Below are positions 4,931 to 26,461 of a DNA stretch of 64,000 nt, piece by piece. Source of the stretch: Octopus bimaculoides (lineage: Eukaryota); the NCBI RefSeq assembly GCF_001194135.2, contig NC_069005.1, positions 3,963,924 to 4,027,923 on the forward strand, in the 5' to 3' direction. The notes below the pieces were generated by a model. It was given only the letters and a program-made list of their open reading frames with translations, was not told where the DNA came from and ran no database searches. The translations under genes and the position numbers were made by a program. The stretch's first letter is position 1. Every line of letters begins with the position of its first letter.

Positions 4931-5002
4931 GTGGCTACAGAGAGTCGAAACCCGTCCACCTCAGATACCGAATACACGACCTCCGACAATAATTACCAAG
5001 AA
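4931..5002 (+). other. Candidate non-coding 5' UTR exon of the Ly6/uPAR gene
   Basis: 72-nt segment, GC-richer than its flanks, between ttgcctgcAG and a strong donor aa|GTGAGT. It contains no ATG. A plausible acceptor (attttgcAG, 7385) lies downstream. Confidence 0.4.
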
Positions 5003-6735: not shown

Positions 6736-7014
6736 TATAATATTGATATTGGTTTGAAATGTAGGTACAAAGACAGCAATTTTGTACGAATACGCTACGA
6801 TTTTGTAAGAATACGTTAGTCCATTTCATGGAACACAATTTCCTCGTAGGAAATATTACTCAAGACAAAATCTGTTTGCTTTGACAGGATTTCAACTCAA
6901 CGTTGTGAGGTAGAATAAATAACCTAAGATATTTTCTAACTATTCTTTGAACTCAATGCTTTGATTATGAATAAATGGTCTCTACGCTAAGCAAAAATCC
7001 CATCAATATTATAC

Positions 7015-7160
7015 GTAGCTTGCTTCCCAACCTCATAGTTCCGGGTTCAGTCCTACTGTGCAGCACCTTAGTCAAGTGGCTTCTGTAGCCTTAGACCAAT
7101 CAGAACATTATGTGGATTTGGTAGACGAAACTGAAAGTCTGAGTGTGACTGTGTGTGTGA
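7015..7160 (+). mobile_element. SINE family B, inverted relative to 6531-6735
   Basis: agcttgcttcccaacctcatagttccgggttcagtcc...ggatttggtagacgaaactgaaag. Confidence 0.85.
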
Positions 7161-7385
7161 GGCGGAACAAATATCGTAACATTTTCTAATTACTATTCGC
7201 AGTCAAAGCTTTGATTATGTATAAATGATCTCTGCTCTCAGCAAAAGTCCTATTTTGAATATAAACAGTTTGCCGTTAACATAATGCTTCATTGCTATTT
7301 TATCATATCGGCCACAAATGATTCAATGCAAATATTTCGGTAAATCCAGAAACTAAACCGAAACGCACTGCAAATTATTTTGCAG

Positions 7386-7440
7386 ACCTCTGAATATTCT
7401 GCCTGCTCGAAGCCTCGTATAATATATTCCGAACTATCGT
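7386..7440 (+). other. 5' UTR part of the first coding exon of the Ly6/uPAR gene
   Basis: Acceptor caaattattttgcAG| at 7385. An in-frame TAA at 7420-7422 precedes the ATG at 7441, so that ATG is the first possible start. Confidence 0.55.
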
Positions 7441-7480
7441 ATGGATCGTAATTGCATTAAGATACTTCTTCTAAATCTAT
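7441..7480 (+). CDS. Ly6/uPAR (quiver/sleepless-like) protein, coding exon 1: signal peptide start MDRNCIKILLLNL
   Basis: ATG plus 13 codons and 1 nt, then donor |GTAAGC (phase 1). It splices in frame to 7594, completing a hydrophobic signal peptide (ILLLNLFVHA) just before the first Cys pair. Confidence 0.75.
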
Positions 7481-7593
7481 GTAAGCTATAAAAGGGTGAT
7501 GCATCCTCAAGTTATTTCATTAAATGCGATTTTATTTCAATGTCCTTAAATGTGTACTTTAATACTAATAATTTTCTTTACAATCTTTTCCAG

Positions 7594-7743
7594 TTGTTCA
7601 CGCAATGATCTCGTGTTCGAGTTGCGATTCACGGAGAGACAAATATTATGGAGAATGTGAGCAGTCACCTCCGCCTCCAAAACCATGTCCTAAAAGCAGT
7701 AATTCACATTTCTGCTCTATAATAAGGGAGACAGAAATCAGTG
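7594..7743 (+). CDS. Ly6/uPAR protein, coding exon 2 (Cys1-Cys5): (F)VHAMISCSSCDSRRDKYYGECEQSPPPPKPCPKSSNSHFCSIIRETEIS(G)
   Basis: 150-nt open exon between a polypyrimidine acceptor (ttttctttacaatcttttccAG) and donor G|GTAAGT, phase 1 at both ends. CxxC-x10-C-x9-C-x8-C spacing fits the N-terminal half of an LU domain. Confidence 0.9.
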
Positions 7744-8294
7744 GTAAGTAAACCATTATTTCCTATTAGTATTGATTAGTCTATTGTCACTTCTAAGCTA
7801 ACGGTGTTCCAACCATTATAGTCCCTACAATTTAGGATGTGCAAGATTATACGAACTGTATTGACGATAATCAAAACGTAAGAGAAAAACTTTGAAGACT
7901 TTACTCCTGCATATTGAGTGTGAATTAAGGAAAATAACGAGGGATTTTCGTTGTTTCCTTGATTAAGATACAATGTAATTGACGGTAGATTCAGGTAAGA
8001 AACCGAGAGATATAAGCACCGGTTTGAAAAATATACTGAAATATTCTGATTTAGTAATTGATACAAACAATGCAATGACCATGCGCGCACACACATGTGT
8101 ATATTTATGTGCAAATGGCGAACAATGAGAATGATTGCACAACACTGCATTGGTTGATGAATACTGATGCATTAATGTTAAAATTGCTTTCATGTTTAGA
8201 CAATCATTTAGCCAATCACATGGAGAGATTGTTAAGATATTTTAAAATGAAACCAACGTTAGCCTTAAGACAATTTATACATAAATATATATAT

Positions 8295-8445
8295 CTGAGT
8301 ATATGCATATATACGTACATACCTACATCTAATTGTATATATCGATGCATGTCTGGGTACAGGACGTCGCAAGAAAACGCGGACAAATTAATAAACAGAG
8401 TACAGAAAACACACACGCCACATAGAACATTTCCTTCATCAGCTG
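8295..8445 (-). repeat. Dispersed repeat, unclassified (second copy at 59037-59180, +)
   Basis: Shared collinear sequence agctgatgaag...atgttct(ct)atgtggc...tcctgtacccaga(c/t)atgca...gatgt(a/c)ggtatg. Confidence 0.7.
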
Positions 8446-9176
8446 CAACCATTCTAAAACTAAACGTTTCGAAGTGTTAGGGCAGGACGCATTGTTAGAG
8501 TGACTCTTCCCGCGGAAACAAATTAAATTTGTAGTGCCGAGGAATATCGTGGCGAACAGAAAACATGACAGGAAAACGAAACCGTGAAAATAAACAAGAA
8601 GAACTAGTAGGGCCGGACGTGAGAATCGCTGTGATGACGAATAGAGACAAATCAAGCAGTTACATACTAGACAGAAGCTTTCATCGAAAATATAAAAAAG
8701 CGGGGAGTACGTGAATAGAGATACGTGCATATCGGTAGCTACTCAATGGACCACGCTAATCCGAAATTTATAATAGCACCTTAGTGCTGAGACATATCGG
8801 AGCTAAAACAAATTATACGCAAATAAAAGGCTCTACAATCATGCATACTAAAAACGTCACCTTATATAATCAACTAAAGTACTAAACTAAGACATTGAAT
8901 GGTGTAGGTCCTTGCGTCGATTCAGACGATGGGAATTTTTTAAAGTGTTGTCCCAGAATGGGCTGCAGTCCAATGACTGATATAGAGTATATTCCATTGT
9001 GCTTTATAAATGAAATTATTAATTGAAATACTTCCGACTCTTGAGAGAATACTTTGGACATTACAGGGAAAAGTATTGAAAATATTTGAATGTCAGATAA
9101 TTTCTCCAGTGATATTTTAAAAAGGTAGGACTCGTATTCAAGGAATAATTCGAGAAAAATAGGAAAATCAGTACAA

Positions 9177-9233
<57 letters not shown>

Positions 9234-9884
9234 AAGCTCTTACCTTCACGGTAACTTACTATGTAAATGAAGTAAGCTACTGATAAACCCTCTACTTGCT
9301 GAAGAAAACGGTACAGTGCCATTTAGTCAGTTGGTAGAGCAACTTTTACGGAAGATCATATCAAAAAATGCGTTCTGATATCATTCAACGATAAATTATA
9401 ATTTTTTTAAAAATAATATACTCTTCTTCGTGTCATGATACTGGGCTGATTCCTAGTTGGTGGTCCAAGAGGCGTCATCATGCAGAGAGCCGATCATGTT
9501 CACCTGTGCTCTGCATGTGTGTTCAGGTCATGAGGGTGATTCGTACGAATAGAAATTTTGAAGGAGGTGTCCAAACATGGCTGCAGTCTAATGACTGAAA
9601 AAGTAAAGGAACATATTACAATCACCTGCTCTGTTATGCTCTAGGAACAAAGGACTCCGAGCAGTAAATGTTTATTTTATAGAAGCCCCCAACTCTAGTG
9701 TGTGTAACGCTGATGCTTGCTGCAGGATGAAATATCGCGAGAAAAAAATATTCGATTTAAAAACTATTTTAGTGAATTTGCTGTGTGGCATTTATTTCCA
9801 ATACAAACACACGATAGAAAGAATCCATCATGCTAGAAATACCATATAAGAGATTTGTTTCCTTTATCTATAACTATTAAAGCA

Positions 9885-10015
9885 ATAAGGTAAAGAATGT
9901 TCGTTAAGTCGGAAGACGTATGTCATTAGTTTCCACTCTTTATATTCTGAGTTCAAATTCCACCAAGGTAAAAATTCGCCTTTCATAATTATTTTGTCGA
10001 TAAAATGTAACACGT
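9885..10015 (+). mobile_element. SINE family A, degenerate
   Basis: ttctgagttcaaattccaccaagg...cgcctttcat...gtcgataaaat. Confidence 0.6.
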
Positions 10016-11002
10016 GCCATGAGCTAATGTTAACATGTTGTCTGAACTTTCAGCCAAATAGTTTCTGGTTTTGTGCTTAAATTAGAAAAACGTTATGAAT
10101 TGTAGTACGAAGTATTCAACACGCCCAGAATACTAAAATAAATATATGAACGAATATTTTCTAATACTTTCAAATTTCAATATCCTGAAAAGACATTAGG
10201 AATTCAAACAAGTTAAAATGTAAGATATTACAAATTCAATATTTCCGGTTATTATAGAAACATCACCACAACTAAAATATATTTGGAAAAAAAAAAATGA
10301 TTTACCTGTACAGTAGATATTGTAAGCCGAAGTCCTCCGATAATAATTAACATAGTAAGTACTCGTGGCGGTTTGTAATCACGTGACGCGTAGGATGAAT
10401 TTTTGTTTTCGTCTTTTTTTTTTCTGCGTTTCATTATTTACATCAGGATGGTGTACGTTCGAAACTAGCATCATACAAACCCGCTACAGCTGACCAATCA
10501 CATATCAAGTTAATCTGAAATTTCACTTCTTGTTAACATCTAGTCTTTTCACCTGTTGAACACGTAAGATAATAATAACGCCTAGCAGGAATCATTAGGT
10601 TATTTCAGAAAAATTTATCGAAAAATCCTGGAAGCGTAACCTGTATTGTATCTATATTTAAAAATAGTTGCTCATCTGCTAATCATTGAAAGTCGAAAGA
10701 AATTGGAATACGATGGTTATTTCATGTACTTTACATATATTCTTTATATACTTTATGCACAATTTTATAGACTTAATAGACAGCACTCTCTCTCTCTTTC
10801 ACTATTCCTCTTCGACTTTCGTTCAGCTACTCATGTGAAAGCGTTACAGACGAGCTAAGTAACGGAGGAAAAAAACTTAATTAAAAAAAAAATAATAAAA
10901 TATACATTCCACCCCGCCTCTCACTCCTCCTCCTGCTCCCCTCCCTAAACATTGGTTTTAGTAATGCAAGCACAAGGTCAGCAATTTCGTAGGAGGGAGT
11001 AA

Positions 11003-11158
11003 GGCGATTATATCGACCTAAGTATTCAACTTGTACTTAGTTTACAGACTCCGAATTGATGAAAGACGGAGTTTACCGCGGCAGAATTTGAACTCAGTAT
11101 GCACACTCCGATGAAATGCCGCTAAGCATTCTGCCCGGCGCCGTAACGGTTCTGCCAA
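11003..11158 (-). mobile_element. SINE family A
   Basis: gatgaaag...cggcagaatttgaactcag...gaaatgccgctaagcatt...ttctgcc is the reverse complement of the family head and body. Confidence 0.8.
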
Positions 11159-11224
11159 GGAATATTTTGACTGCAATAATTTATATCAAGTTCAATGTTA
11201 TTTCTTATTGAAATTCTTTCTTTT

Positions 11225-11292
11225 GTTCTTTCATTCCTTTGTTTGTTTCAGTCATTTGACTGCGGCCATGCTAGAACACCGCTTTCAAAAGA
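11225..11292 (-). mobile_element. Isolated SINE/LINE 3' tail
   Basis: tttcagtcatttgactgcggccatgctagaacaccgc, same tail as at 45485-45540 and 56705-56750. Confidence 0.7.
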
Positions 11293-11640
11293 TTTCACTT
11301 ATTTGATTGATTTTAATTTTCAAAAAGATAAAACAACTTTGGAACACATTAAACACAGAATGTAACGACGATAGACATTTCTGTTCTTGGGTTTGGCTTA
11401 TGCGCTAAAGAAGCAGTTTTCATAGCAGCTGCTCAGTTGTTTCCATCGACAGTGGCATATTACTTAAAGTCTAAAAGGAATAAATTGACCTCGGAAAGAT
11501 TTGAAACTAGAAGCTAACGAGACGAAGAAACGCTGTAAGTTATTCTCTCCAACACTCAAATAGATCTATCTTAGTTCAATGGAATACTTCAGAATGAAAT
11601 AGAAAAAGAAACTATAATAAAGAAAATATATCTTTTCTAT

Positions 11641-11834
11641 TCTAGACACAAGATCCAATATTTTGGGGGAGGGTACATCGATCCCAGTACGCAATTAGTG
11701 CTTAATTTATAGACCCCGAAAGGATGAAAGGCAAAGTCGACCTCGGCAGAATTTGAAGTCAGAACATAAAGACAGACGAAATACCGCTAACCATTTTGCC
11801 CGGCGTGCTAACGTTTCTGCCAGCTCGTCGCCTT
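11641..11834 (-). mobile_element. SINE family A (central domain resembles the Meta/MESC domain)
   Basis: gaccccgaaaggatgaaaggcaaagtcgacctcggcagaatttga...gctaacgtttctgccagctcgtcgcctt. The domain name is from recollection and was not searched. Confidence 0.9.
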
Positions 11835-11850
11835 GAAAGAAATGTTTACT

Positions 11851-12090
11851 TCTCGAGCCATGCCAGGTTCATAAGGGCCCGTTTTCCAGTTTCAGTGGCG
11901 TATAAATTCCACACCTGGACGGGACGCCAATGCGTTCCAGGGTTACTCATTTTTGCCAGCTGAGTGGATTCGAGCAACATTAAATGAAGTGTTTTGCTAA
12001 AGAATACAACGCATCACCCGGTCCAGGAATCGAAACCACAATCTTAAGATCATGAGTCCAACATCCTAACCACTAAGCCAGGCGACTCAC
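11851..12090 (-). mobile_element. tRNA-derived SINE, family C
   Basis: The reverse strand reads ggcttagtggttagg (A box)...ggtttcgattcc (B box)...agcaaaacacttcattt...ccactcagctggcaaaaatgagta...ggcgtcccgtccagg. Confidence 0.85.
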
Positions 12091-12338
12091 CAGAGCAACT
12101 TATATTGCATTTCTTGTGGTGTGTTGAGTGAAACCGACGTTACATATCCCATTGTAATTATTAAATCAGTTGATAAAAGAATTTCATTAAATCTAATTCA
12201 GTTTCATACATATACATTAAACTCACACACATACATCGTGTTCCTCCTTACAAATGAATTTAATTTATATTTCATATATTTCCGACCATTGAGATACTTT
12301 CAACATTATAGGAAGAGACATCGAAAGCATTTCATATT

Positions 12339-12410
<72 letters not shown>

Positions 12411-12412
<2 letters not shown>

Positions 12413-13038
12413 AAAATTTATTTATGAGGGTATAAATGGATATTAATCAATTTGAACCAGTGGTCTAGCATATTAAAAAAATCCGAAGATTAAAATTATA
12501 TTACATACAAAAATAAGAGGGATGACCATCAAAAGTGGACTCCTATATGCTAGAAATAGATGCCGAATCATCTAGCCACGAAAAAAATATATGTTCTCAG
12601 TAAAAATTCGGTGACATAACAGACTGTAAAAGGGCAAGACAAATGAAAAAAAATACTAAATAAAAACGATTAACCTACGCACCATGGTTTCACCTGTTAC
12701 ATAAGTAAATATCTGCAGGATCGTCAGCGTAGTCTGTCGATTTGCGATGTAATTTCCAGAACTAGACACAGGACTTCTAACCGAAAGGGAGCACGTGTAG
12801 AGTTCTACAAATTACATTCAGTGTATCCTTTTAAATGTCTTCAATCTGGCGCGCTAAGTCCGGAAATAATTCTGCAGTTAATACATTTTTGCAGCTAATT
12901 TACCGGTTTGAGAAACATTATTGTATAAAAATTTATTTATGAGTGTAGAAATGGATATTAATCAATTCGTGGTTAGATGATTCGGCATCTATTTCTAGCA
13001 TATAGGAGTCCACTTTCGCTGATCATCCCTCTTATTTT

Positions 13039-13042
<4 letters not shown>
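12411..13042. mobile_element. Probable Penelope-like retroelement remnant with direct and inverted terminal duplications
   Basis: 42-bp direct repeat (12411-12452 and 12926-12967) plus 77-bp inverted repeat (12506-12582 and 12966-13042), with TA microsatellites on both sides. The family assignment is inferred from the architecture. Confidence 0.5.
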
Positions 13043-13081
<39 letters not shown>

Positions 13082-14454
13082 TTTCGTAATAAAATTGTGG
13101 TACCAATACAGCAATGCAAATGATTCTCCGAGTTGTAGAGTTTAATATTTTTAGTGAAATATTATTTACATTGCCTAAATATATATCATTTATTCTATAT
13201 TCTGTGGCAAATAGCTGCAACGATTGCCCCTCAAATTGTTTACCAGTGACATCTGACTCGAATTTACCCACGGTCTTAAGAAATGTAATATATTTTCCAA
13301 TAAATGATATAATCCACGACTTTTCTCTCTCCGTGTGTCAACGATGGTGGACATCCATACCGAACTCTGAAAATTATTACTGTTTTTTTTCTTTGGAGAG
13401 TTAAATATACAAATGAAGTTTGGCATTTGCCTTCTAACGATTCCCTCTGATAGTGCTGTTCTAGTGCGTATTCAGTCCTACTCTTAAACCACATTATATA
13501 TTGAACTCTTACAGAGAGGGTTAGCTTTTGTTATTTCAGGGTTTTTTACACGCGCTGTTTGGGTTATACAACTTGTCTGCAGTCAGCCTTAATTCAGTTC
13601 TGTATGACATATCCAGAAAACTATTTTATGATATCTATCCAACAACTGATTTTCTTTGTAAGTACAATCTTCGCAGGCCAACGCCAACCATTGGTAATTA
13701 GTGAGCAATATTAACTCTATATTTATCGAAAGTATTGAGTCCTGAATAACATGCATTTAACGTTTTGCCAAGAACCAGGTATCCATCTGCAATAAGCCGA
13801 ATGTTCGTGGCTGGAATACCTTTAAACATACATCTACATAATCTCCGTCGACCTAAAGCTAAATGCATAGTACAATTATTATGTATCATCCGTTTAATGA
13901 ATGCACGAGGAATAATTTATGGTAGCCTTGAAATTGCAACTCAACATCAGAGTGGCATATTTGTGCAGCAATGCTTTTATATACGAGTCATTTACTTTAT
14001 ACAGCATTTCTAAGTGAATATGTATGAACATGTTTACATACAAAGCGCTTTCACGCCACTTACATCTTTGATCGACCTAAAGTTAAGAAAGTCAAATGTG
14101 CACTCTTTAAACATTATTTGCTAATGCCTAGCTTTCCGTTAGTATTACATTTGCAACGTCTTTGATATAAAGTTGTAAATTCTTTGATGGAAAATAGCTA
14201 GTTCTTTTTGATACAAAGTAGTAAACTATTTGATACGAGTAAAACATTGTTTGTTATAAATTAGAAATGTAGTTTCTAAAAATTGTACTAACTTCTTTCA
14301 TGTATAATTATGTGTGTGAATGCATGGGTGTATTTACAGGAGAATGAAACCTTTTGAAGCCATTTAACGTTGTCAATAGCTCTTAGAAATGCAACTGTAA
14401 CATTCCAACTCAATACTAGATTATTCTCTGTCGTGATATTTAGTTAACGTTGTA

Positions 14455-14720
14455 AGGTTTCGTTTGTCCGGAGCTGTGGATAGGTGAACAGCAGAAGGAG
14501 TCTGAGTGGAAGCCCACTCCCCTCATAGAGAATTTTGGGCTCTTTATTTCTTACACTTTAAACAAAGTAGGGCCGCCTCGATGTCATGTCTAATGGATAC
14601 CTCTCTGCTGACACATTCTGTTGAAGTCCTCTCTGTGGCCGGTGAAATAAGTAACAGTTGAACAATCTTCTTAACCCATCCACCTCGTGATTGCTGGCTA
14701 GCCTTGTGTAAACCTTTCAA
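14455..14720 (+). mobile_element. Possible RTE-type LINE 3' remnant
   Basis: GC-richer island. Frameshifted translation fragments RLSG..W..EQQ..WKPT..G(R)PR recall RTE ORF2 C-termini. The match is weak. Confidence 0.3.
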
Positions 14721-14757
14721 ACCAATACTGTATGCATCCTAAGACTAACAAGCTAAT

Positions 14758-14975
14758 AAAGGTGGTAAGCTGGTTGAAATGTTAGCACTCCGAATAAAAT
14801 GCTTAACACCATTTCGTCCGTCTTTACCTTCCGATTTCAAATGCCGAGGGAGATTGACTATTGCCTCATCTATTTGGTGTCGGTAAATAGGTTCTATTTG
14901 TGCACTATGGTAGTTGTAACCGACTTATGCATTCCCCCGAAATTGCTTGCCTTGTGCCAAAATTTGAAAGAAATA
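14758..14975 (+). mobile_element. SINE family A
   Basis: aaaggtggtaagctgg...aaaatgcttaac...ttcaaatgccgagg...ccttgtgccaaaatttgaaag. Confidence 0.8.
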
Positions 14976-15494
14976 TTACCATATTAGCACAGCAATTTTC
15001 TGTTAGATATTTCCTTAAGATAACGACCGAATATATGAAGGGCGTAAATTTTCGATTTTGACTTCTGTATGAAAGTTAGAAAACAATTAAAGCAACCCGT
15101 ATGACGGCTTAATGGAGTGTGCAGTATAGAAATAACCCATTGTCGGTGAACCGAGACAGTAGGATTTCGAATTACCATCGTAATTGAAAATATTTTGGTT
15201 TACGTATTCCATAAGTTTCATGCATATGAACATAACATTATAACTTACTTGCTGAACTAGGATGCATTTGTGTTTAATTTTAGGCGACCAATGGACATTC
15301 TCAGAACAAAATGTCAAAAAAGAGAAGTATAAGTGTGTTCTGTTACTCACTTTCCTACTCAACATGGGATGTATCAGTAAAAAAAGTAATACGTTTACGG
15401 GTAAAATAATCCGGTAAAAGAACAGGGTATAATAACAAGGTATAATAACGGGGTAAAATAAGGTTTTAATGTTTTTCTGAAATAAAGACAAATA

Positions 15495-15714
15495 CTCTTT
15501 TCTACTCTAGGCACAAGGCCCGAAATTCTTGGGGATGTGGGGGTCCTGTCGATTCGATCAACCCCAGTACGCAATTGGTACATAACTTATCGACTCCGGT
15601 AGGATGAAAGGCAAAGTTAACCTGAGCTGAATTTGAACTCAGAACCTAAAGACAGACGAAATACCGCTAAATGTTTCACCTGGCGTGCTAAAGTTACTGC
15701 TAGCTCACCGCCTT
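15495..15714 (-). mobile_element. SINE family A
   Basis: ctaggcacaaggcccgaaatt...ggatgaaaggcaaagtt...aatttgaactcagaac...gctcaccgcctt. Confidence 0.9.
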
Positions 15715-18154
15715 AGGAAGGGAATTTATTGTTAAATAAAAACAAATATTAACAGCTGCTGATGATGGCGTATAAGTAGCAGCAAGAAAGGAATAAGCAG
15801 GCGTCATTTTAACAAGCAGCACTGGTGGATATGAAAAAGGCAATGGCAAATATTTTCTACAGATTTCAAGCGAGTGTGTTTGTGTTCACAACGAGAACGA
15901 AATCAACACGATTTTTTCTCAGCATAGTTTCCGGTCACAAGATTTGGCAAAGGTTATGCCATATCAGTGAGATTTTTAGGCAGGAAAAGCATGCAACGTG
16001 TGCAGAATTAATTTACAACCATTTTGTTATTTGTGAAGAATAAATTGCATTAACTGGAATTAGATAAAAAAGAAGGAAAGCCATGCTTTATTGCGAAAAT
16101 AAATTAAAAGGAACATTATTTCAACGTTAGTGTAACGCATTATTAATTCTCGTTTTGATGCATAAACCAATGATAATTATAATCCTAATGATAATACTAA
16201 CACCAACCATATTGAACTAAAACCTGTATCGCTTGTTTTATTTGTCGATGATATTTTTGTTCCATATAAAATATCGACCATTTATTAAGGTGTAAAGTAA
16301 GGAATGGAGAATTTTATGTGTTTGATATTAATTAGAAAGTATTAAGTCAAATGGGGTAGAATAACGGTTCAGCTTGCAACGCAACCTTGAAGCAACTTCC
16401 TTAGCAAAGCTGTGAAGATATTTAAGTTTTAAACGAGGATGATATCGATAATACATAATCAGTCTGTGGGAGTACATTATTATTCAGAACATGCCTGATC
16501 GATTGATCGAAATTGAATTGACTAAACAGAAACAGGTAATGATTCAAATGAGGAAATAATTATGATGACCCAGATTATCTTTACTTACGTACATGACACA
16601 TGCAATCCTCACGTTCACACGCTAAGTATATTATCATATAAAGAAATTTCCTTATTAAATATCCTGCAATTACTTGAGTAAATCTTTATAGTAAATCGCA
16701 TATTGGTATACATGCCTGCATAATTAAGTTTGCTGCACAACGATTTATAGCAGATGCATAAAGTCATATGTCTTGGGGTGAATGGTATAGACGATCTTAT
16801 TTACGGCTCTCGTTCGTGAATATATAAAAACATAACGGTGACCTGAATGCACTCCGAAACCAGAAAGTAATATCATGTAAACTAAATGCTACAAAATATA
16901 ATGCCCACCGAACTGGCATCTCTGCCTACGCTGCTTTCTGTCTGGTATTTGTTCTAGCTTCATATTCCCTTCCTTTACACCGTTCAAAAGTAGTTTATTT
17001 AATGGATATCAAAACTCCAATGGTCCACTTCTATAGGTTACGTATAGTTACAAGGCCAAGACGAATATTGGTAGATCTTGAAAAAGTAAGGTAACATATG
17101 TTTTTGTCAACATGCCTATAACACGCCACTATTGAACCATGGTTTTTTTTTTTCATAAACCAAGTAGCAACCATCATCCGATCCACATCAAACTTAACAG
17201 ACCGGATAATGCAGACTATTTTTGCATTCTTAAGTAAATTCTTCATCGAAATGTAAGTTATGTTATACGATGGTTCTTATTGAATAGAATTCTTTGGAAG
17301 AACTGCGCACCTATTTGAGAATGTGTTTGAAAACCGGAAAAAAACCCTTCTGAGTGGTGTATAAATTACTGAAGGAAATAGGAGGCCGTACGTTTGATGA
17401 TATTGTAAGCGAAGTAGTACTTTTAAAGACAACGTTTCTCTACGAGTAGTGGAACTTCAGTCACACGTCAATTCTGAGCTAATCTTCAATCGAGTAGCAA
17501 CCTGCTACTTTCTTGGCTTGTAATTGTGGTGGTCGTCGGTAATGTTTTACTTCTTTAACAATCACTCAAGTACTGTTTCTGTGTCTGCTTCATATGACAA
17601 AATTTTCAACTGGGATATTTAATTGTTTCAGGCTGAAACTGGCTACACTTTCGATGGAGGGAAATTTGCAAGTGGTTGTAGTTCTAACGAGTTCGGTGGC
17701 ATTTTTATTGGATATATCTTACAATAATATTCCTTTTCCTCCATTTAGCTATTTATTAATCTGCAAAATAGTTTTTATATCATATTCCCTTCTGCCAATC
17801 CTGTTCTTGTTAGTGTCGGCATCTTAAAGTAGTTACTTTTTTTTTTCTGATGTTAAGATAAAATCATTTTGCATTCGGTTGAATAAACTTGTTTTCTTGG
17901 AAGATGTGCTTAAGTATTTGAAACTATTTAAGCTGCAAGTTCTTTCAGATAGAATTTGCTTAATCTTTTTCTACGCTTGCAGTATCTTCTTAATGTCTTT
18001 TCACACACACACATATATATATATAATTTTATTTCTAAGATACTACTTTTTCTTATGCGTGTTCCATCTCTTCATTATCCAAATCGCTGAGCAAATATAT
18101 GCCTTCCTCATGCTTTTCCCCCAATGCCATATGCACATTATGATCCAATTTGTG

Positions 18155-18380
18155 TTGACTGGCTGAGAAGTTTCTAACTCAATCAGGATCGAATCCAGGT
18201 CTCCCACGTTACTACTAAATATCGATCTTGTCGGATTGGTTACTAAATAATGGTCTACTAAGTTTCGATATATTGATCGGCAGTCCAGGTTGAACACGAA
18301 TGCGACACAATGATTAAGAAGAAATATCGCTTGATATTATTCGAACGCTCTAATGCCTCTTCCAACCCAGCTCCCTATGA
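18155..18380 (+). mobile_element. Possible degenerate mariner-like 5' end
   Basis: gactggctgagaagttt resembles the mariner-type terminus seen at 61762. No transposase is readable. Confidence 0.3.
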
Positions 18381-19231
18381 TCTCGCATAGCAATTGTCAT
18401 GAAAGCTAATAAGGATTCAATGTAAGAAATTTAGGAAATGGTGGAAGAGTAAACTACTAGATATATTGAACTTTATTATACCAACTTCGGAATAATAAAA
18501 TGGTAAAGTCGAAATATTCGGGATATAGTGTTACGCATCTAATTATTTGGGGGAATTTTTATCTTCCCTGTATCAAGTGTTGAGATTTTCAGCTAGCCCT
18601 GAATGAAAGGTAACTGCAAAGTATTCCCAAGCGCCCCATCGCACAACAGCTTCATGCAGTTAATGCTTTGTTTGCAGAGTTGCATGTCAAGCGGGGCAGC
18701 AAAAATGTGTACTGGGATCGATTGTGAGAAATCCTAGATTCCAGAGATGGAGGAAAAGAAATGAGAGCTGTGTTTGTTGTGGAAGTTGCGGGATTCGACG
18801 TTGAACACAAGGGTGATGTGTGTGTGTGTGTGTGTGAGTGAGTGTGAGAGAGGGAGACAGAGAGAGAGAGATGTGATTTGTGAATCTATGCGTGGTGGTA
18901 GCAAGTAACCATCCAGTTCTCAGCAACAGAGATTATTATACAAGCTGAAAATACTGAGAATAATAGCGCAACGTTAGGAAGCATCATTGCAGTAACTATA
19001 ATCATAGAACTGATTGTGTGAAAGTGAGTTACTTTATATCGAGAACGTATCGTAGTGTTTTGTTTCTTTTTATATTAATCAGTCAAGAAACCTTCTTCTG
19101 GGTCCGATATGAGACGTCGGTGCACAACTACGCATAAAGTAAGAGCAGGATTTTAAACAAATACAGAAATACAATTATACAATTATATGCCAGCCATTTA
19201 TTTACGAGTATTGTTAACACTAACAAACTCA

Positions 19232-19301
<70 letters not shown>

Positions 19302-19495
19302 TTATGTGTGTGTGCCTGCGTATAATGCATATATAATTATGTATTTGATAGATATATGCCGGTATATGTGTGTGTCCGTGTGTGTCTTTGTGTGTGTGTT
19401 TGTATGTGTAATTGTAAATATGTATATAAGCATGTATGTACTTATATATATATATATATATGTGTATGTGTATAATCGATATGTATAGATGAGGA

Positions 19496-19728
19496 AAAGC
19501 AGTGAGCTGGCAGAATCGTTAGCATGCCGAGCAAAATATCTAGCGGTATTTCGTAACCCGTAATTTTCTGAGTTCAAATTCCGCCGAGGTAACCTTTGAC
19601 TTTTATCCTTTCCTGTTCGATTAAATAAGTACCGTTTACGTACTGGGGTCGATGTGTTCCACCTAATCCCTTTGTCTGTCATCGCTTGTACCCTCTATGT
19701 TTAGCTCCATGTGGGAAATAAACAAATA
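19496..19728 (+). mobile_element. SINE family A
   Basis: gtgagctggcagaatcgttagcatgccg...ctgagttcaaattccgccgagg...taaataagtacc...actggggtcgatgt. Confidence 0.9.
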
Positions 19729-20600
19729 CATATGTACACATGAGGAAATATCAAATGCGTATATTTATGTACGTATTGCTGTCCTTTCTTCTTCGTGTAT
19801 ATAATCGTCAACAAGCAGATTATGTTTGCATCAACATAGTCACACACCTGTACAGAAGAACACATATATAGTACATGGTAATGAACTTCAAATTCTTGAT
19901 CGCTGTACGTCATACAGTGAATTGCAGTAATTTCTAATGGATGCTTTTATAAAGGAATCGTGTGAAGGTCAATTGAAGGATACATCCGAAAGCAGGGAAA
20001 TATTACACATCATGCTCAACGGAACTCTATGTCTGGAGATTACGTTCTGTTATCTTGTATAACCTTGTTCGCAAACTATTGTTTTGCTTGAAGCCAAAGG
20101 AAAAATAATTATTGGAATAATGAAATTAAAGAAAATGTTAAATAGAAACAAAATGAAAAAGAAGTTACTTATCGCTTCGAATCATACAAGATGAAGCTTC
20201 TGCAGATATTACTATTCGTTCAAAAATAATAATTATTATTAGAATTGTAATGATGATGAAGATGATAAATATAAAAAGTTATAAATAATAATATAATTCT
20301 TTGTATTACTTGTAGTATTGTTATCTATAAATTAATAATGTTTTATTAACGTATTTGTCTTGTGAATATGTCTTTGTCTTCTAAATATGAATAATCATGA
20401 TTTTAACAAACTTTGGTCAACTAGTTGGACTTAAGAACGTCCGCAATATTTTCCACCAATCTACAATATGCCTCTAATAATAATAATTGCAATACGCCAA
20501 TAATAATAATAATAACAATAATAATGATTTCCAAATTTTGCCTCAAGGCAACTTGTACGTATTTTATCGACCCCGATACATACATACATACATACATACA

Positions 20601-20657
<57 letters not shown>

Positions 20658-20715
20658 TTAATGTAAGCAGACTAACATCGATTATTACTTTTTAATACAA
20701 ATAGACTTTATCCCA

Positions 20716-21976
20716 TCCATAACGTTTACAAGTAATCATAATAGTTCTTAAGATTATGTTTATAATACTAATTAATAGTTTATCTTAATAAAATGCCCAT
20801 TAGTTAATTACAATTATTTACTTACTGATATGTAAACACCTATTGCTCATAATGCGATTGATCAAAGTCCAGCTTTCGATATAATTGGACTGTTGAATTT
20901 AAAAACAAAGAGTAGTCTATTAAAACCATTATAGGGGTAGATATAAATAAATAAATAAGTATATAAATAATAAAAATATGGAGAAGTAGTATATGTTTTT
21001 ATGTGGCCCGAAAACCGCTTAGGACTTTATAAATTAATTAAATGATTACAATTTAGTTACTTGCTAATTACGATCATTGATGCAGATGGAAGTGCAATTG
21101 TAGTATGCACCCAAGCAAGGGTTGATATATCGACAATTTTAGTAATAATAATATAATAATATCTATTGATTATGATTAAGCAAACTGTACTATAAGCGTG
21201 CGACTGCAACAATAATTGTAATAGCAAGTAATTAAATGTTAATCCTTTAATTAATTTGGGGATTTGTACTCATAGTTATTTAAAGGACCACTACGCTGAA
21301 TGTAATTAGGTATGTCTAGCCAATTACTGTTTGTTTGTCTAGTAAGACCACTGCTTGGGTACTGTAGTGTTAGTTCATATGTTAGTCTTTGTATTATAAT
21401 TCTGTAAATGTAAGTCCTTGCTCTAGCCATTAACTCCTCTTAACTGTAGACTCCCCTTAACCGTAGTTCTACCTTTATCTCCCTCCCTCTTCCCTTTCCT
21501 TCTAATTAACTTCCGTTCTTTGTCTACTAATTTCTCCAATTTTCTAAAGCATTTGTCCAACTTTTTCCCCGAACCGCCTTAAGTCACATTGGTCCAATCA
21601 GGGACCTCTACAGGTTTTAATGACCCTGCGAATTTTGTTCATTCCTACGCATGGTGCTTGTTTGCACGTTTGTTTTTATTTACAATGTCCTAAGCGGGTT
21701 TTGGGTCACTTTAAACCTATACTGCTTCTCCATACTTTTATTATTTATTTACTAACATCTAACCCTACAACGGCCTTAATAGCTTACTTCTTTGTTTTTA
21801 AATTTAACTGACCAATTATAACGAAAACTGGACTTCCATCAATCCCATTACGAGCAATAGGCGTTTGGTCTCTGCATCATGTCAATAAGTAAGTAATTGT
21901 AATTAATTGATGGGCAATTAGTACTATTAACTTAATTAACTTAAGTACTTTTACGATTACTTCTAAACGTTATGGA
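20716..21976. repeat. Long diverged inverted repeat (arms ~20716-21035 and ~21676-21976)
   Basis: Collinear reverse-complement blocks throughout. Examples: tccataacgtttacaagtaatc / tccataacgtttagaagtaatc; aagtccagctttcgatataattgg / aagtccagttttcgttataattgg; gtggcccgaaaaccgcttaggac / gtgacccaaaacccgcttaggac. Confidence 0.9.
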
Positions 21977-23721
21977 ACTATCGCTCCCTCTTTTTCTAGA
22001 TTTTTTGGCGTATCTCGTTATGGTAAAGTTTGTATTTTACATTATTCTTTATACATCTTGTTACCCCTATATAAAAATCAACCCACCAAATATTATATTT
22101 TAAGTTTAGTCATTTACTCAACGTCCTGAAGCATAGGTAATTATACTGATAGTAAAACGGATATTTTTATCCCTTAGACGGTTATTCCAAACTCTAACTC
22201 AACTAATCTTTATATATATATGCATAAACGCGCACACACACATACACAAACACACACATATATATATTATTTTGGTATACACCAAGTGGTATACTTGGTA
22301 TAATTTTTAAAGCCCTTTCACAGCATTGGGCTACCTGATGGCAGCAACTGTCTGTACAACTTCTCACCCGGAAGGCACTAGTGTATGCTGGTTCGAAACG
22401 TTCGTAGTGGTTCTGAATAAAGAGTCAGCCGTATTGCAATTTCTTTCTCTCGTATTTATGTGTGGGCGTCTGTAAAGAACGACGGAGTGAGAGAGAAAGA
22501 GGGATATAGACAAATGCATATACAGATAGAGATGAATATTTCACACATATGCACTCGTTTATTTGTTGTGTAATCCGTATATATGTATAAGTCATGTGTG
22601 TGTACGTGTACACCTGTGTATCAGTGTACGAATATATGTGTAATGCTATATTCATACAGGTATGGTATTTCCGTAAAAATTTCAATTGATATAATCACAA
22701 CGAAATGCACGCAAACATACACATTACAAATATTCAATACGTGATAGCGTTATGATAACAAATATAAAATTTTTAAAGCGATCTTATTTAATATCATAAA
22801 ACTAATTTCCATGAAAGTAAAATTGTCAAAGGAAAACGAACACATAAATGTTGATCTCACCTTTTCATTCTTACTTTTGTTGTTAATTTCCAGGTAGATT
22901 TCAACCATTTGTACGACTTTATATACGTGATAAGCTTATTGAAATGCAAATTCAAACAGACACGCGGAAATACATTTATGTTCATACCCGTATGAACATA
23001 AACTTACGTATGTGAGAAAGGAATTCTGTTTGTAAATGCATGTTTATATATATGTGTGTTTTTGTGTGTGCCCCTATGTATGTGCATGTCTATTTTTGTG
23101 CCAGGCTGTATGATCCTATGTGTTGATGTTTGTGTTAATATCTGTATGCATAAAACTAAATGTACAAATTTAGGGATCAATCGAAAGCGATATTAAAATT
23201 TCAAAAGTTCCCATTTTAATAAATCTTGATAAAAATATTTTTATTTTTCACTTTCGGTAACATTTTGGGTTAAAGCCAACAGATTTTTACTGCTCATATT
23301 CATCGTGTTATTTTTTATATTTTTGTTATTTATATTTCTCTGTATAAACTTCATGTGTTACTTCTGTGCAGCAGTCTGTCGTACTCTGTGAAGCAATTGT
23401 AATTTTAAATAAATCAAATATATAGTTCTCACCTGATTTGAGCAAATCCATATCTATTCATAAATTAATGACAGTTCCGAACGCGTTATCATCTAGCTTT
23501 TACATGTTTCACTCATTAACTTTGGCCAGACTGGAGTATTACACTGAAGTATTTATTCGAACAACTCGATGTCAAAACATATTTTTAAAAACTTAGTTAC
23601 TCCATAACTTTTACGGAAATCCTAAATTATCGATAGGTATGACATCTACCAGCAGTTGTCATGCGGGGGGAGTGAACAAATACAATTGACAATACGAAGA
23701 CACACATACATATACATACAT

Positions 23722-23753
<32 letters not shown>

Positions 23754-23828
23754 ACGCGCGTGTATATATATATCGAGAGAGAGAGAGAGAGAGACATACA
23801 AACATTGATATAGACAAATAGATACATA

Positions 23829-24182
23829 CAGGGGTTGGACAAAATAATGGAAACGCCTAGCATCATAGCATCGTAATTTTGAAATATCCATAAAACAATC
23901 CGTCAAAATCTTGCTTCTTTTTGTGTTTTTTTATTTATTATTAGTGTTGTGAAATATGTTTTATCTAAAATTGCTGTTTGTTTTCAGATATCATCAGAAA
24001 AAAGTTAATTAAAATACATGAAAATGACAGATCTATAGGACTTTCAAAAGGTCAAATTGTTGGTGCTCGTATGGCAGGCGTTAGCGTAACGAAAAAAACC
24101 AAATGTTTGGTGTATCAAGAACTACTGTCTCAAAACTAACGGCAGCATTTGAGATAGAAGGAAAAACCTCCTCGTCAAAACG
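23829..24182 (+). mobile_element. Tc1-family DNA transposon, 5' end with disrupted transposase N-terminus
   Basis: TA followed by terminus CAGGGGTTGGACAAAATAATGGAAAC. From 24024 it reads MTDL*DFQ/GQIVGARMAGVSVTK/MFGVSRTTVSKLTAAFEIEGKTSS (paired-like HTH), with one stop and two frameshifts. Confidence 0.9.
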
Positions 24183-24254
24183 ATCAAATGATTGGGTAGA
24201 CATAAGCTCATTCCTCAATCAGATATACATTATCTGTACACATGTCAGATGTTC

Positions 24255-24358
24255 AAAGCAACGTGAAATGAAGTGTTTTGCTCAAGAAGCCCAGTCTCGG
24301 AATTGAACCCACGATCTCGCAATCGTGAGTGCCACACTCTAACCACTAAGCCATGCAC
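24255..24358 (-). mobile_element. SINE family C, 5' part
   Basis: The reverse strand reads gcatggcttagtggttagagtgtgg...gggttcaattccg...ttgagcaaaacacttcatttcacgttgc. Confidence 0.85.
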
Positions 24359-24388
24359 CTTATACACACACACATACATAAATATTTG

Positions 24389-24530
24389 GTATGATCAATA
24401 AGTATCCGGACTGTATCCATTTTAACGAAACCAAAGCACACGAAGAGAAGCCACTTGGCACAGATTGACCTTGAACTCTGCATTGCATGTGGACTCGGCT
24501 AAGTTTTAACCTTCTAGCTGACTTCTACTA
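24389..24530 (+). mobile_element. Mariner-like transposon 5' end fragment
   Basis: tgatcaataagtatccggactg...gcacagattgacc matches the terminus of the mariner at 37025-37648. Confidence 0.7.
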
Positions 24531-25675
24531 GCTATACATATTCAGTCACCCCAGCCCCTATTATTTAAACATTTTTGAATTTTTGTTGTCATATTTCTCC
24601 GAAATGTTTTACAAATGTTTGTAGTCACGTGAGTATCTACATGCATTCCGTTGCTTACTGTGATTTTATCAACTATTAATGTGAAAAATCATAACAGTTT
24701 GTTTGTCTCTTACGGTTGAAAGCTGAATCCAGCGTGTAAAGAGCGAGGTTATTTTCGAGAAAAAAAACAGATTTATGTATTTTGCTTTAGAATAAGTGTT
24801 AAAACTAATTTTGTAAAGCTCTGTACTAGTACTTATAACTCACAAATCTATTGGAAAGAAGAAAAAAAAACAATAGCTTGTATGAAACGAGATTTGAAAT
24901 TTAGATGCTATTTTGAGATGCAAATGAAATCTCTTGGACGTCTTTCATCATATTTCTGCTCGAAGTAAATGGATTTTCGGTGAAATACCTAAAACAGAAA
25001 CTAAAGAAAAACAAATTTTGACGTCTCTCTTCACAGGCATGACATGCAAGTAATAGTAGTGTTTTTTTTTTGTTTTTTTTGTTTTTTTTTACTAAAAGTG
25101 CCCTCTCCTTACTTCCAAATAGTGAAAATGAAGTTTAATGTACGTGACAGGCAAATAAATTGCAGCTGCTTTAGACGAGACATGTAGTGCGCATGCACAA
25201 ATCCTGAGTCCATAATGAAATTACCTTTAGTGAACCAGCAAATCTTTGGCAGTCACGAAAGTGGACCAAAGGGGAGTTAACAAGACCCTATCATGACGAC
25301 TTTTAAAATATCTTAGAAGAGTCAAAATGAGGTCACTAGTCTCAAGGTCACACACTGTGGGCTAATGCTGTGTCGTCTGATTTAAAGCACTCAGAAAGGA
25401 TCAGAACAACTAAAGAGATGAAAGTAGCGGTGAAGGCAAGCGTCAAATCAGGTTTCAATGAACTTCCCTGAGTGTAAATAATGACCGATTAAATCACCTC
25501 AGAGTAAAGAAAGATTAAGGTTTTAAGGACTTGTCATTTTTAGAGACATATACATCGAACATAAATGTCAGTGAAAACTACTCTATTGTAAACATTATGA
25601 GAAAAATAGGGGAAGAGTTAGTTGAATCTGTTACTCTATAGACATAACTTACCTCTATGTTTCCTTTCTTTGCAG

Positions 25676-25911
25676 GTACTCCAGTGCGATTCGCCAGGGA
25701 TTGTGCGGATAAATATATAGAGGAAGATTGCGTTGTAAAAAATATCACGGCAGCGAGGAAGACTACCTATTGCATTCGAACCTGCGACACAGACGGATGC
25801 AATGCACAAGGACTAGAAATGCGGGGTGGATCCTCGAAATTGAATATATTTACTTACTTAGTTTTCGGGCTTGCTTTACTACTTAATATTCAACAATTAG
25901 CCTTTGTTTAA
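25676..25911 (+). CDS. Ly6/uPAR protein, terminal exon (Cys6-Cys10 plus GPI-type signal): (G)TPVRFARDCADKYIEEDCVVKNITAARKTTYCIRTCDTDGCNAQGLEMRGGSSKLNIFTYLVFGLALLLNIQQLAFV*
   Basis: Strong acceptor tttcctttctttgcAG, phase 1 matching exon 2. Contains the C-x3-C-x4-CN terminus typical of invertebrate Ly6/quiver proteins, a small-residue spacer and a hydrophobic C-terminus. Stop TAA at 25909-25911. Confidence 0.92.
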
Positions 25912-25929: not shown

Positions 25930-26461
25930 NNNNNNNNNNNNNNNNNNNNNNNNNNNNNNNNNNNNNNNNNNNNNNNNNNNNNNNNNNNNNNNNNNNNNNN
26001 NNNNNNNNNNNNNNNNNNNNNNNNNNNNNNNNNNNNNNNNNNNNNNNNNNNNNNNNNNNNNNNNNNNNNNNNNNNNNNNNNNNNNNNNNNNNNNNNNNNN
26101 NNNNNNNNNNNNNNNNNNNNNNNNNNNNNNNNNNNNNNNNNNNNNNNNNNNNNNNNNNNNNNNNNNNNNNNNNNNNNNNNNNNNNNNNNNNNNNNNNNNN
26201 NNNNNNNNNNNNNNNNNNNNNNNNNNNNNNNNNNNNNNNNNNNNNNNNNNNNNNNNNNNNNNNNNNNNNNNNNNNNNNNNNNNNNNNNNNNNNNNNNNNN
26301 NNNNNNNNNNNNNNNNNNNNNNNNNNNNNNNNNNNNNNNNNNNNNNNNNNNNNNNNNNNNNNNNNNNNNNNNNNNNNNNNNNNNNNNNNNNNNNNNNNNN
26401 NNNNNNNNNNNNNNNNNNNNNNNNNNNNNNNNNNNNNNNNNNNNNNNNNNNNNNNNNNNNN
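25930..26461. other. Assembly gap (N run)
   Basis: 532 N, starting 18 nt after the Ly6 stop codon. Confidence 1.

What the first reader, a model, noticed from the sequence alone, without database searches (positions are those of the whole stretch)
7441..25911. Hidden spliced gene: 141-aa GPI-anchored Ly6/three-finger protein split by an 18-kb intron
Seen: three GT-AG exons (40, 150 and 236 nt), joined in phase 1, give MDRNCIKILLLNLFVHA-MISCSSCDSRRDKYYGECEQSPPPPKPCPKSSNSHFCSIIRETEISGTPVRFARDCADKYIEEDCVVKNITAARKTTYCIRTCDTDGCN-AQGLEMRGGSSKLNIFTYLVFGLALLLNIQQLAFV. It has 10 mature-domain Cys, one N-glycosylation sequon (NIT) and a hydrophobic tail. Established: a signal exon, a Cys1-5 exon and a Cys6-10+GPI exon is the usual Ly6/three-finger layout, and the C-x3-C-x4-CN end is typical of the quiver/sleepless-like group. 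Inference: this is an intact gene that small-ORF annotation would easily miss. The ORF track shows only its last exon.
Basis: partly seen in the sequence, partly recalled or inferred. Interest (0 to 1): 0.7.

Follow-up and report, generated by a model that had tools for sequence, protein, structure and literature searches.

The report
Annotated octopus quiver/Ly6 gene, wrong first exon

Summary
The sequence features are all present as described. The three GT-AG segments splice in phase 1 to exactly the quoted 141-aa protein, with 10 mature-domain Cys, one NIT sequon and a hydrophobic tail.

Exons 2 (7594-7743) and 3 (25676-25911), and the 17.9-kb phase-1 intron between them, are correct. They match RefSeq XP_052832696.1 (LOC106875693, Octopus bimaculoides, 152 aa) at 100%. 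An older 124-aa RefSeq model already joined these two exons, so the gene is not hidden.

The proposed exon 1 (7441-7480) is not supported:
- RefSeq, the O. vulgaris orthologue, the paralogue, Argonauta, and intron-less contigs that look like transcripts from unidentified relatives all share a different, conserved N-terminal exon (MISLLGNNIGFLC...).
- That exon is absent from the window. The gene spans about 237 kb.
- Look-alike first exons occur about 1.5 times per 7.6 kb per strand in this window.

Family assignment is well supported:
- Pfam QVR matches over its full length, narrowly below the cut-off.
- hhalign against PF17064-annotated proteins gives 97% probability.
- The AlphaFold2 model has pLDDT 84.7, and all top Foldseek PDB hits are LU or three-finger domains.
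- Both intron positions and phases are shared with a zebra-mussel homologue.

Verdict: an ordinary, already annotated gene, and low interest.

The parts
1..7593 (+). 3' end of the very large intron 1. The real first coding exon lies upstream of the window.
   Evidence: No match to the conserved exon-1 peptide MISLLGNNIGFLCTAVFGLLTTIH anywhere in the window (tblastn at E<=100; profile scan). The gene range is 236.8 kb in GCA_001194135.2.
7441..7480 (+). It is most likely a chance ORF inside intron 1, and at best an unproven alternative first exon.
   Evidence: Look-alikes occur about 1.5 times per 7.6 kb per strand. It is not homologous to the N-terminus of any relative. The resulting 141-aa protein is absent from the protein collection.
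7594..7743 (+). Coding exon 2 (150 nt, entered and left in phase 1). It encodes the last residues of the signal peptide (VHA) and Cys1-5 of the LU domain. Met at 7605 is the start of the older 124-aa RefSeq model.
   Evidence: 100% identical to XP_052832696.1. Strong acceptor and GTAAGT donor. The independent QVR profile hits it. The intron-1 position and phase are shared with the Dreissena homologue.
7744..25675 (+). Intron 2 (17,932 nt, phase 1, GT...AG). It is full of microsatellites and SINE-like repeats.
   Evidence: The split Gly codon (G|GT) sits at the tip of the hairpin between strands 36-44 and 49-57 of the model, which is loop 2. The Dreissena homologue has the same column and phase.
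25676..25911 (+). Coding exon 3 (236 nt including the TAA stop). It encodes Cys6-10, the NIT sequon, the C-x3-C-x4-CN end, a GGSS candidate omega site and the hydrophobic tail of the GPI signal.
   Evidence: 100% identical to XP_052832696.1. It is the best hit of the independent QVR profile (E 1.9e-4).
25930..26461 (.). Assembly gap (532 N) starting 19 nt after the stop codon. It hides the 3' UTR.

Best explanation
Window 7594-7743 and 25676-25911 are coding exons 2 and 3 of the already annotated Octopus bimaculoides gene LOC106875693. The gene encodes a 152-aa precursor of a single-domain Ly6/uPAR (LU, three-finger) protein of the quiver/QVR family.

Shown here:
- The two exons, their phase-1 splice sites and the 17.9-kb intron between them.
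- Identity to the RefSeq protein.
- Homology to QVR-family proteins.
- A confident three-finger model.
- Intron positions conserved with a bivalve homologue.

Inferred:
- The precursor enters the ER through the signal peptide MISLLGNNIGFLCTAVFGLLTTIHVVHA. Most of it is encoded on a first exon about 0.2 Mb upstream, outside the window.
- It is cleaved after VHA and forms five disulfides.
- It is N-glycosylated at NIT.
- Its C-terminal hydrophobic tail is exchanged for a GPI anchor near RGGSS.

Inferred by analogy with Drosophila QVR/SSS and mammalian Lynx/Ly6 proteins: on the outer membrane leaflet it binds a membrane partner through its loops, loop 2 above all. The partner would most likely be an ion channel or nicotinic receptor, or alternatively a junctional complex as for boudin, crooked and coiled. 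Binding would tune the partner's surface level or gating.

For: -: the exons, splice sites and translation are as described.
- there is 100% identity to XP_052832696.1 over exons 2 and 3. The RefSeq N-terminus is not in the window.
- the older 124-aa RefSeq model covers the same two exons. The O. vulgaris orthologue is 94% identical, with 0 of 9 differences in the exon-1 part and all Cys kept.
- gene ranges are 104-254 kb in four octopod genes.
- homologues sit uninterrupted on 1-2.5 kb contigs from 21 sequencing runs. This looks like mRNA, and they have the same N-terminal exon type.
- the chance rate of pseudo first exons is about 1.5 per 7.6 kb per strand.
- Pfam QVR matches positions 1-86 of 86 at E 4e-5, and 29 of 33 aligned relatives hit QVR.
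- 96 homologues, mostly carrying PF17064.
- hhalign of the cephalopod clade against PF17064-annotated proteins gives probability 97% and E 1.2e-10.
- an independent profile picks exactly the two exons. The spliced protein scores 38.5 bits.
- the AF2 model has pLDDT 84.7 and pTM 0.75. All top PDB matches are LU or three-finger domains (C4.4A, LYPD6 at TM 0.62/0.60, uPAR, Lynx1, GPIHBP1).
- the Dreissena homologue has both phase-1 introns at the same alignment columns.
- PMC6600238 gives the canonical three-exon, phase-1 LU gene layout with the intron at the tip of loop 2. PMC4735452 gives the QVR/SSS mechanism through loop 2.
Against: - The single sequence scores 24.7-25.1 bits against Pfam QVR, just under the 27.3-bit gathering cut-off.
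- No O. bimaculoides RNA reads could be examined, so none of this gene's junctions is shown by transcript data here.
- The position of exon 1 is inferred from the catalogued gene range, not read from DNA.
- Signal-peptide cleavage and GPI anchoring rest on rule-of-thumb inspection only.
- The partner and physiological role are pure analogy. QVR-family members have diverse roles.
Confidence: 0.9

Rival explanations
1. Exon 7441-7480 would be a genuine first exon, possibly an alternative promoter, giving a 141-aa isoform with the short signal peptide MDRNCIKILLLNLFVHA.
For: It is the only one of 71 phase-compatible candidates in the 7.6 kb upstream of exon 2 that combines a GTRAG donor with a hydrophobic stretch. 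The peptide has a charged n-region, a hydrophobic stretch of about 8 residues, and the same VHA cleavage motif, which is supplied by exon 2. No O. bimaculoides transcript data could be checked.
Against: Such candidates arise by chance at about 1.5 per 7.6 kb per strand in this AT-rich window. The peptide has no similarity to the N-terminus conserved in orthologue, paralogue, Argonauta and the unidentified intron-less homologues. The exact 141-aa protein is in no catalogue. Neither RefSeq model uses this exon. The uninterrupted hydrophobic run is only 4 residues, against 15 in the RefSeq signal peptide.
Confidence: 0.06
2. The locus is a decaying or non-functional copy (pseudogene) of the QVR family, and its open frame is a coincidence.
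For: No transcript evidence for this species was available here. The gene is embedded in repeat-rich DNA with huge introns.
Against: The reading frame is intact across both exons and the splice sites are consensus. The O. vulgaris orthologue is 94% identical with every Cys, the sequon, the CN end and the tail retained. All ten Cys and R82 lie in columns that are invariant or nearly invariant (at least 90% conserved) across 33 relatives.
Confidence: 0.02
3. The protein is a real LU-domain protein that is secreted or held by a transmembrane segment, rather than GPI-anchored.
For: No dedicated GPI predictor was available. The tail (IFTYLVFGLALLLNIQQLAFV) contains polar N and QQ residues.
Against: The hydrophobic stretch ends at the very C-terminus with no cytoplasmic residues. 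It is preceded by small residues (GGSS) and a short polar spacer, which is the standard GPI-signal layout. The tail is a feature of nearly all aligned relatives, some of which are named as GPI-anchored boudin-like proteins. In canonical LU genes the GPI signal sits in exon 3 (PMC6600238).
Confidence: 0.05

Closest known systems
RefSeq gene LOC106875693 of Octopus bimaculoides (XP_052832696.1, 152 aa; earlier model XP_014779428.1, 124 aa)
   Same: It is the same gene. Exons 2 and 3 of the window are 100% identical to residues 26-152 of the 152-aa protein.
   Different: NCBI names it only 'uncharacterized protein'.
Octopus vulgaris CAI9740544.1 (UniRef 'Protein sleepless'), and the paralogue LOC106882999 / CAI9723963.1 (UniRef 'Protein quiver')
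   Same: The orthologue is 94% identical, the same length, with an identical signal-exon peptide and a similar gene span (244.5 kb). The paralogue is 60% identical with the same architecture and a 254-kb span.
   Different: The orthologue has nine substitutions, none at a Cys. The paralogue has a shorter tail and lies on a different chromosome-scale contig.
Drosophila QUIVER/SLEEPLESS and the Pfam QVR family PF17064 (also boudin, crooked, coiled, Bero)
   Same: It has a single LU domain with 10 Cys, a C..TC..DGCN end, a signal peptide plus GPI-type tail, and a size of about 140-150 aa. The profile match covers the full length.
   Different: Identity to non-cephalopod members is only 22-36%. 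No orthology to a particular insect member can be assigned. The cephalopod clade has its own SRCDSRRD.YYGECEQSPP.P.PCP motif in loop 1. Function is untested.
Vertebrate GPI-anchored LU proteins (Lynx1, LYPD6, CD59, uPAR domains, C4.4A)
   Same: Same three-finger fold (Foldseek probability 1.00, TM about 0.6). Same three-exon, phase-1 gene layout with the intron at the tip of loop 2 (PMC6600238).
   Different: Sequence identity is 13-20%. No PDB hit was found by sequence alone. The first intron is far larger.
Dreissena polymorpha homologue P0043 (CM035916.1)
   Same: Both phase-1 introns are at the same alignment columns. Exon sizes are 67/153/200 nt, against 73 (inferred)/150/236 nt in the octopus gene.
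   Different: The whole gene spans 1.8 kb with introns of 1076 and 339 nt, against about 237 kb in octopus.

Membership tests
Ly6/uPAR (LU) three-finger superfamily | Plesiotypic 10-cysteine pattern ending in C-x3-C-x4-C-N | tested here: met
   The Cys lie at mature positions 4, 7, 18, 28, 37, 56, 65, 79, 83 and 88, followed by N89. Across 33 relatives the Cys columns and the terminal Asn are invariant or nearly invariant, at 90% or more.
Ly6/uPAR (LU) three-finger superfamily | Three-finger beta-sheet fold | tested here: met
   The AF2 model of the mature domain has pLDDT 84.7 and pTM 0.75, with four long strands in two hairpins. The top 50 Foldseek PDB matches are all LU, three-finger-toxin or TGF-beta-receptor ectodomain structures, with probability 1.00 for the best and TM up to 0.67.
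Ly6/uPAR (LU) three-finger superfamily | Gene layout of a signal exon plus two LU exons, with phase-1 introns and the second intron at the tip of loop 2 (PMC6600238) | tested here: met
   Exon 2 is entered and left in phase 1. The split Gly codon is at residue 47 of the model, between strands 36-44 and 49-57. The Dreissena homologue has the same positions and phases. The signal exon itself is outside the window and was not read.
Ly6/uPAR (LU) three-finger superfamily | Consensus disulfide connectivity (1-5, 2-3, 4-6, 7-8, 9-10) | not testable with these tools
   Model coordinates are not returned. This needs inspection of the model or mass spectrometry of the protein.
Pfam QVR (PF17064, quiver family) | Score at or above the family's curated gathering threshold | tested here: inconclusive
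The match covers positions 1-86 of 86 at E 4-5e-5.
Pfam QVR (PF17064, quiver family) | Demonstrable homology to accepted family members | tested here: met
   29 of 33 aligned relatives hit QVR, best E 2.5e-10. A profile search returns 96 proteins, most with precomputed PF17064. hhalign of the cephalopod clade against 16 PF17064-annotated proteins gives probability 97% and E 1.2e-10. The independent profile scores the protein at 38.5 bits.
Pfam QVR (PF17064, quiver family) | N-terminal signal peptide | tested here: inconclusive
   The RefSeq N-terminus has a 15-residue uncharged hydrophobic run followed by V-H-A. That exon is not in the window and no SignalP-type predictor was available.
Pfam QVR (PF17064, quiver family) | C-terminal GPI-attachment signal | tested here: inconclusive
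   The layout fits: small residues GGSS, a spacer, then a 15-residue hydrophobic stretch (mean KD 2.25) running to the C-terminus, and the feature is shared by relatives. This is heuristic only. No GPI predictor or biochemical test was used.
QUIVER/SLEEPLESS functional class (modulators of Shaker K+ channels and nAChRs) | Binding to and regulation of Shaker-type channels or nAChRs through loop 2 (PMC4735452) | not testable with these tools
   This needs co-expression, co-immunoprecipitation or electrophysiology. Sequence orthology to Drosophila qvr specifically was not established.

The most novel reading that the evidence does not exclude
The proximal 40-nt segment (7441-7480) is a real, lineage-specific alternative first exon. 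In that case LOC106875693 would use two promoters about 0.2 Mb apart to attach different signal peptides to the same QVR domain.
Probability: 0.05. Interest if true: 0.2.

Novelty: already known. Interest (0 to 1): 0.1.

Why it matters
It matters little as a discovery. The gene has been in RefSeq since the first Octopus bimaculoides annotation, and automatic pipelines already call its O. vulgaris orthologue sleepless/quiver.

The check has two uses:
- It is a calibration case. A reader working from raw sequence recovered two real small exons 18 kb apart and named the family correctly. It then completed the gene with a nearby chance ORF, because the true signal exon is about 0.2 Mb away.
- It documents a side point. 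This octopod QVR clade keeps the ancestral LU-gene intron positions while spreading about 150 codons over 100-250 kb. A bivalve homologue fits them into 1.8 kb.

No member of this cephalopod clade has been studied functionally as far as the literature search showed. A role in tuning neuronal excitability remains an open, ordinary hypothesis.

Tried and rejected
- Sequence search of the PDB with the 141-aa protein found nothing at E<=10. The fold comparison was needed instead.
- The first AlphaFold2 run used the full precursor and a 6-sequence alignment. It gave a poor model (pLDDT 56.4) and was not used. The second run used the mature domain with 87 sequences.
- DNA for the O. bimaculoides, O. 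vulgaris (orthologue and paralogue) and Argonauta loci could not be fetched, because each gene range exceeds 100 kb. The distal exon 1 could therefore not be read.
- I first treated P0002 as the orthologue. The cluster listing showed it is the paralogue LOC106882999, and P0003 is the orthologue.
- I looked for a second LU-domain gene or pseudo-exons in the window, since such genes often cluster. Six-frame profile scans found none.
- I looked for anything else coding or structured in the window and found nothing. There were no Rfam families and no tRNAs. The ten longest non-repetitive ORFs had no Pfam hit.
- Two literature searches for cephalopod Ly6/quiver work found no paper on cephalopod members.


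Full report
**1. The observation**

The three segments are in the sequence exactly as described. They are 7441-7480 (40 nt), 7594-7743 (150 nt) and 25676-25911 (236 nt, ending in TAA). Their donors are TAT|GTAAGC and GTG|GTAAGT. Their acceptors follow polypyrimidine tracts (…TCTTTTCCAG| and …CTTTCTTTGCAG|). Joined, they give 426 nt that translate to the quoted 141-aa protein.

The mature part has ten Cys, five in each of the two large exons. It also has one NIT sequon, a C-x3-C-x4-C-N end and a hydrophobic C-terminal tail. The mechanical ORF list shows only the last exon (25657-25911). The window is 33% GC, rich in TA and CA microsatellites, and has six N gaps. One gap begins 19 nt after the stop codon.

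**2. The gene is already annotated, with a different first exon**

A protein search returned 'uncharacterized protein LOC106875693 [Octopus bimaculoides]' (XP_052832696.1, 152 aa). It is 100% identical over the part encoded by exons 2 and 3, but it begins MISLLGNNIGFLCTAVFGLLTTIHV- instead of MDRNCIKILLLNLF-.

The cluster listing added three facts:
- An older RefSeq model of the same gene (XP_014779428.1, 124 aa) starts at the Met inside exon 2 (window 7605). It already joins the two exons across the 18-kb intron.
- The true O. vulgaris orthologue is CAI9740544.1 (152 aa, UniRef 'Protein sleepless').

The orthologue differs at 9 of 152 residues. None of the differences is in the exon-1 part and none is at a Cys. 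A paralogue (LOC106882999, 60% identity), an Argonauta hians protein and three proteins from unidentified relatives all share the same N-terminal exon type, M..(L/F)G.N.G(F/Y)LC…. One of those unidentified homologues is encoded without interruption on 2.1-2.5 kb contigs from 21 sequencing runs. That is what spliced mRNA looks like.

The conserved exon is not in the window. tblastn at E<=100 and a profile scan of all six frames find only exons 2 and 3. The catalogued gene range is 236.8 kb in O. bimaculoides, 244.5 kb for the O. vulgaris orthologue, 253.9 kb for the paralogue and 103.9 kb in Argonauta. The window holds only 7.6 kb upstream of exon 2. The real signal-peptide exon must therefore lie roughly 0.2 Mb upstream. 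This is an inference from the gene range, because the DNA could not be fetched.

**3.

No. I listed every ATG-initiated open segment of 25-130 nt that ends at a GT in phase 1, which is what exon 2 requires.
- In the 7.6 kb upstream of exon 2 there are 71 such segments, and 36 have a hydrophobic 8-residue window. AT-rich DNA encodes I/L/F-rich peptides cheaply.
- Over the whole window, both strands, 25 segments meet all the criteria. That is about 1.5 per 7.6 kb per strand.

One such segment upstream of exon 2 is therefore expected by chance. Its peptide is not homologous to any relative's N-terminus. An alternative first exon cannot be excluded without O. bimaculoides transcript reads. I put it at about 5%.

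**4. What the gene encodes**

- *Pfam.* QVR (PF17064, 'Quiver family u-PAR/Ly-6-like domain') matches over its full length (positions 1-86 of 86) at E 4-5e-5. The score is 24.7-25.1 bits, just under the 27.3-bit curated cut-off.
- *Homology searches.* An exhaustive profile search found 44 representatives at E<=1e-3. In an alignment of 33 of these relatives, the Cys columns, the Arg of RDC and the terminal Asn are invariant or nearly invariant, at 90% or more. Almost all members have a signal peptide and a hydrophobic tail. 29 of the 33 hit QVR.
- *Wider profile search.* It returned 96 proteins from molluscs, rotifers, annelids, flatworms and chelicerates. Most carry PF17064 and many are named sleepless, quiver or boudin-like.
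- *Profile-profile comparison.* The cephalopod clade against 16 non-cephalopod PF17064-annotated proteins gives 97% probability and E 1.2e-10.
- *Independent test of the exons.* An HMM built only from those 16 proteins ranks exons 3 and 2 first and second among 2046 six-frame segments of the window, on the right halves of the profile. It scores the spliced protein at 38.5 bits.
- *Structure.* A PDB sequence search found nothing. An AlphaFold2 model of the mature domain with an 87-sequence alignment is confident (pLDDT 84.7, pTM 0.75). Its best Foldseek matches in the PDB are all LU or three-finger structures: C4.4A, LYPD6 (TM 0.62/0.60, rmsd 3.4 Å), uPAR, Lynx1, GPIHBP1, three-finger toxins and TGF-β-receptor ectodomains.

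**5. Gene structure**

The literature describes the canonical LU gene as a signal exon plus two LU exons flanked by phase-1 introns. The internal intron lies at the tip of loop 2 and the GPI signal is in exon 3 (PMC6600238).

Here exon 2 is entered and left in phase 1. The split Gly codon (G|GT) is residue 47 of the model, in the turn between strands 36-44 and 49-57.

The Dreissena polymorpha homologue P0043 could be read as DNA. It has exons of 67, 153 and 200 nt. Both of its introns are in phase 1 and at the same alignment columns as in the octopus gene. They are only 1076 and 339 nt long, and the gene spans 1.8 kb. The acceptor at 7593/7594 and the junction 7743/25676 are therefore supported by conservation of intron position as well as by the RefSeq model.

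**6. How it most likely works**

Shown here: an intact, conserved QVR-family LU domain.

Inferred from the sequence layout:
- ER entry through the distal-exon signal peptide.
- Cleavage after VHA.
- Five disulfides.
- N-glycosylation at NIT.
- Replacement of the tail by a GPI anchor near RGGSS. This motif is conserved in the paralogue. It is followed by a short spacer and a 15-residue hydrophobic stretch that runs to the C-terminus.

Inferred by analogy only: on the outer leaflet the domain binds a membrane partner through its loops. In Drosophila QVR/SSS, loop 2 alone is needed to bind Shaker channels and nAChRs and to lower surface nAChR levels (PMC4735452). Other family members act in septate-junction assembly, so the partner here is open. 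I put GPI-anchored three-finger protein at about 0.9, and an ion-channel or nAChR modulator role at perhaps 0.3-0.4.

**7. Comparison, novelty and verdict**

It got two things wrong. The gene is not hidden, since RefSeq has two successive models and UniRef gives family names to the orthologues. The first exon, and so the 141-aa product, is very probably not real.

Nothing else of note is in the window. There is no second LU exon. There is no Rfam family or tRNA. The ten longest non-repetitive ORFs have no Pfam hit.

Novelty: already known. Interest: low. The one mildly notable side observation is that a gene of about 150 codons has expanded roughly 130-fold in octopods while keeping its ancestral intron positions.

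**8. Limits**

- No O. bimaculoides RNA data, no SignalP or GPI predictor, and no orthologous octopus DNA were available.
- The junctions, the processing steps, dN/dS and the exact place of exon 1 therefore remain inferred.

Noticed in passing
outside the window; loci of P0001, P0003, P0002, P0008; L007 2001-3835: Octopod members of this QVR clade spread 147-152 codons over 104-254 kb. The Dreissena polymorpha homologue has the same two phase-1 introns at the same columns but spans only 1.8 kb.
   Followed up: partly
window 25930-26461 (also 27655-27805, 28913-29162, 33565-33630, 56941-57787, 58424-59036): There are six runs of N, which are assembly gaps. The first starts 19 nt after the stop codon, so the 3' UTR and polyadenylation signal cannot be read in this window.
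   Followed up: no
window 11674-11834, 15557-15714, 19495-19742, 44888-45134, 52224-52334: A dispersed repeat family of about 150-250 bp at 74-82% identity, in both orientations. It looks SINE-like. Three copies lie inside intron 2. ARAGORN and Rfam found no tRNA or RNA family in them.
   Followed up: partly
They are related to copies at 33317-33454 and 45180-45317. So the DNA just upstream of the proposed first exon is repeat-derived.
   Followed up: no
window 20794-21037 and 21675-21916: An inverted repeat pair of about 250 bp at 77% identity, inside intron 2.
   Followed up: no
window 62223-62322 and 62976-63075: A direct repeat of 100 bp at 95% identity, 750 bp apart.
   Followed up: no
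window 45554-45671; 51666-51742; 30558-30793; 50970-51177: Four tandem arrays: a perfect 54-bp tandem repeat (2.2 copies), a perfect (TAT)25 array next to long poly-A/T-type tracts, and two degenerate (AT)n arrays of about 200 bp. TA and CA microsatellites produce the many 'YIYIYI' and 'CVCVCV' pseudo-ORFs in the ORF list.
   Followed up: no
P0011 (367 aa) and P0014 (1940 aa): Two long catalogue proteins contain 2 and 9 QVR-like stretches. They are either genuine multi-LU proteins or fused gene models of tandem arrays in some other genome.
   Followed up: no
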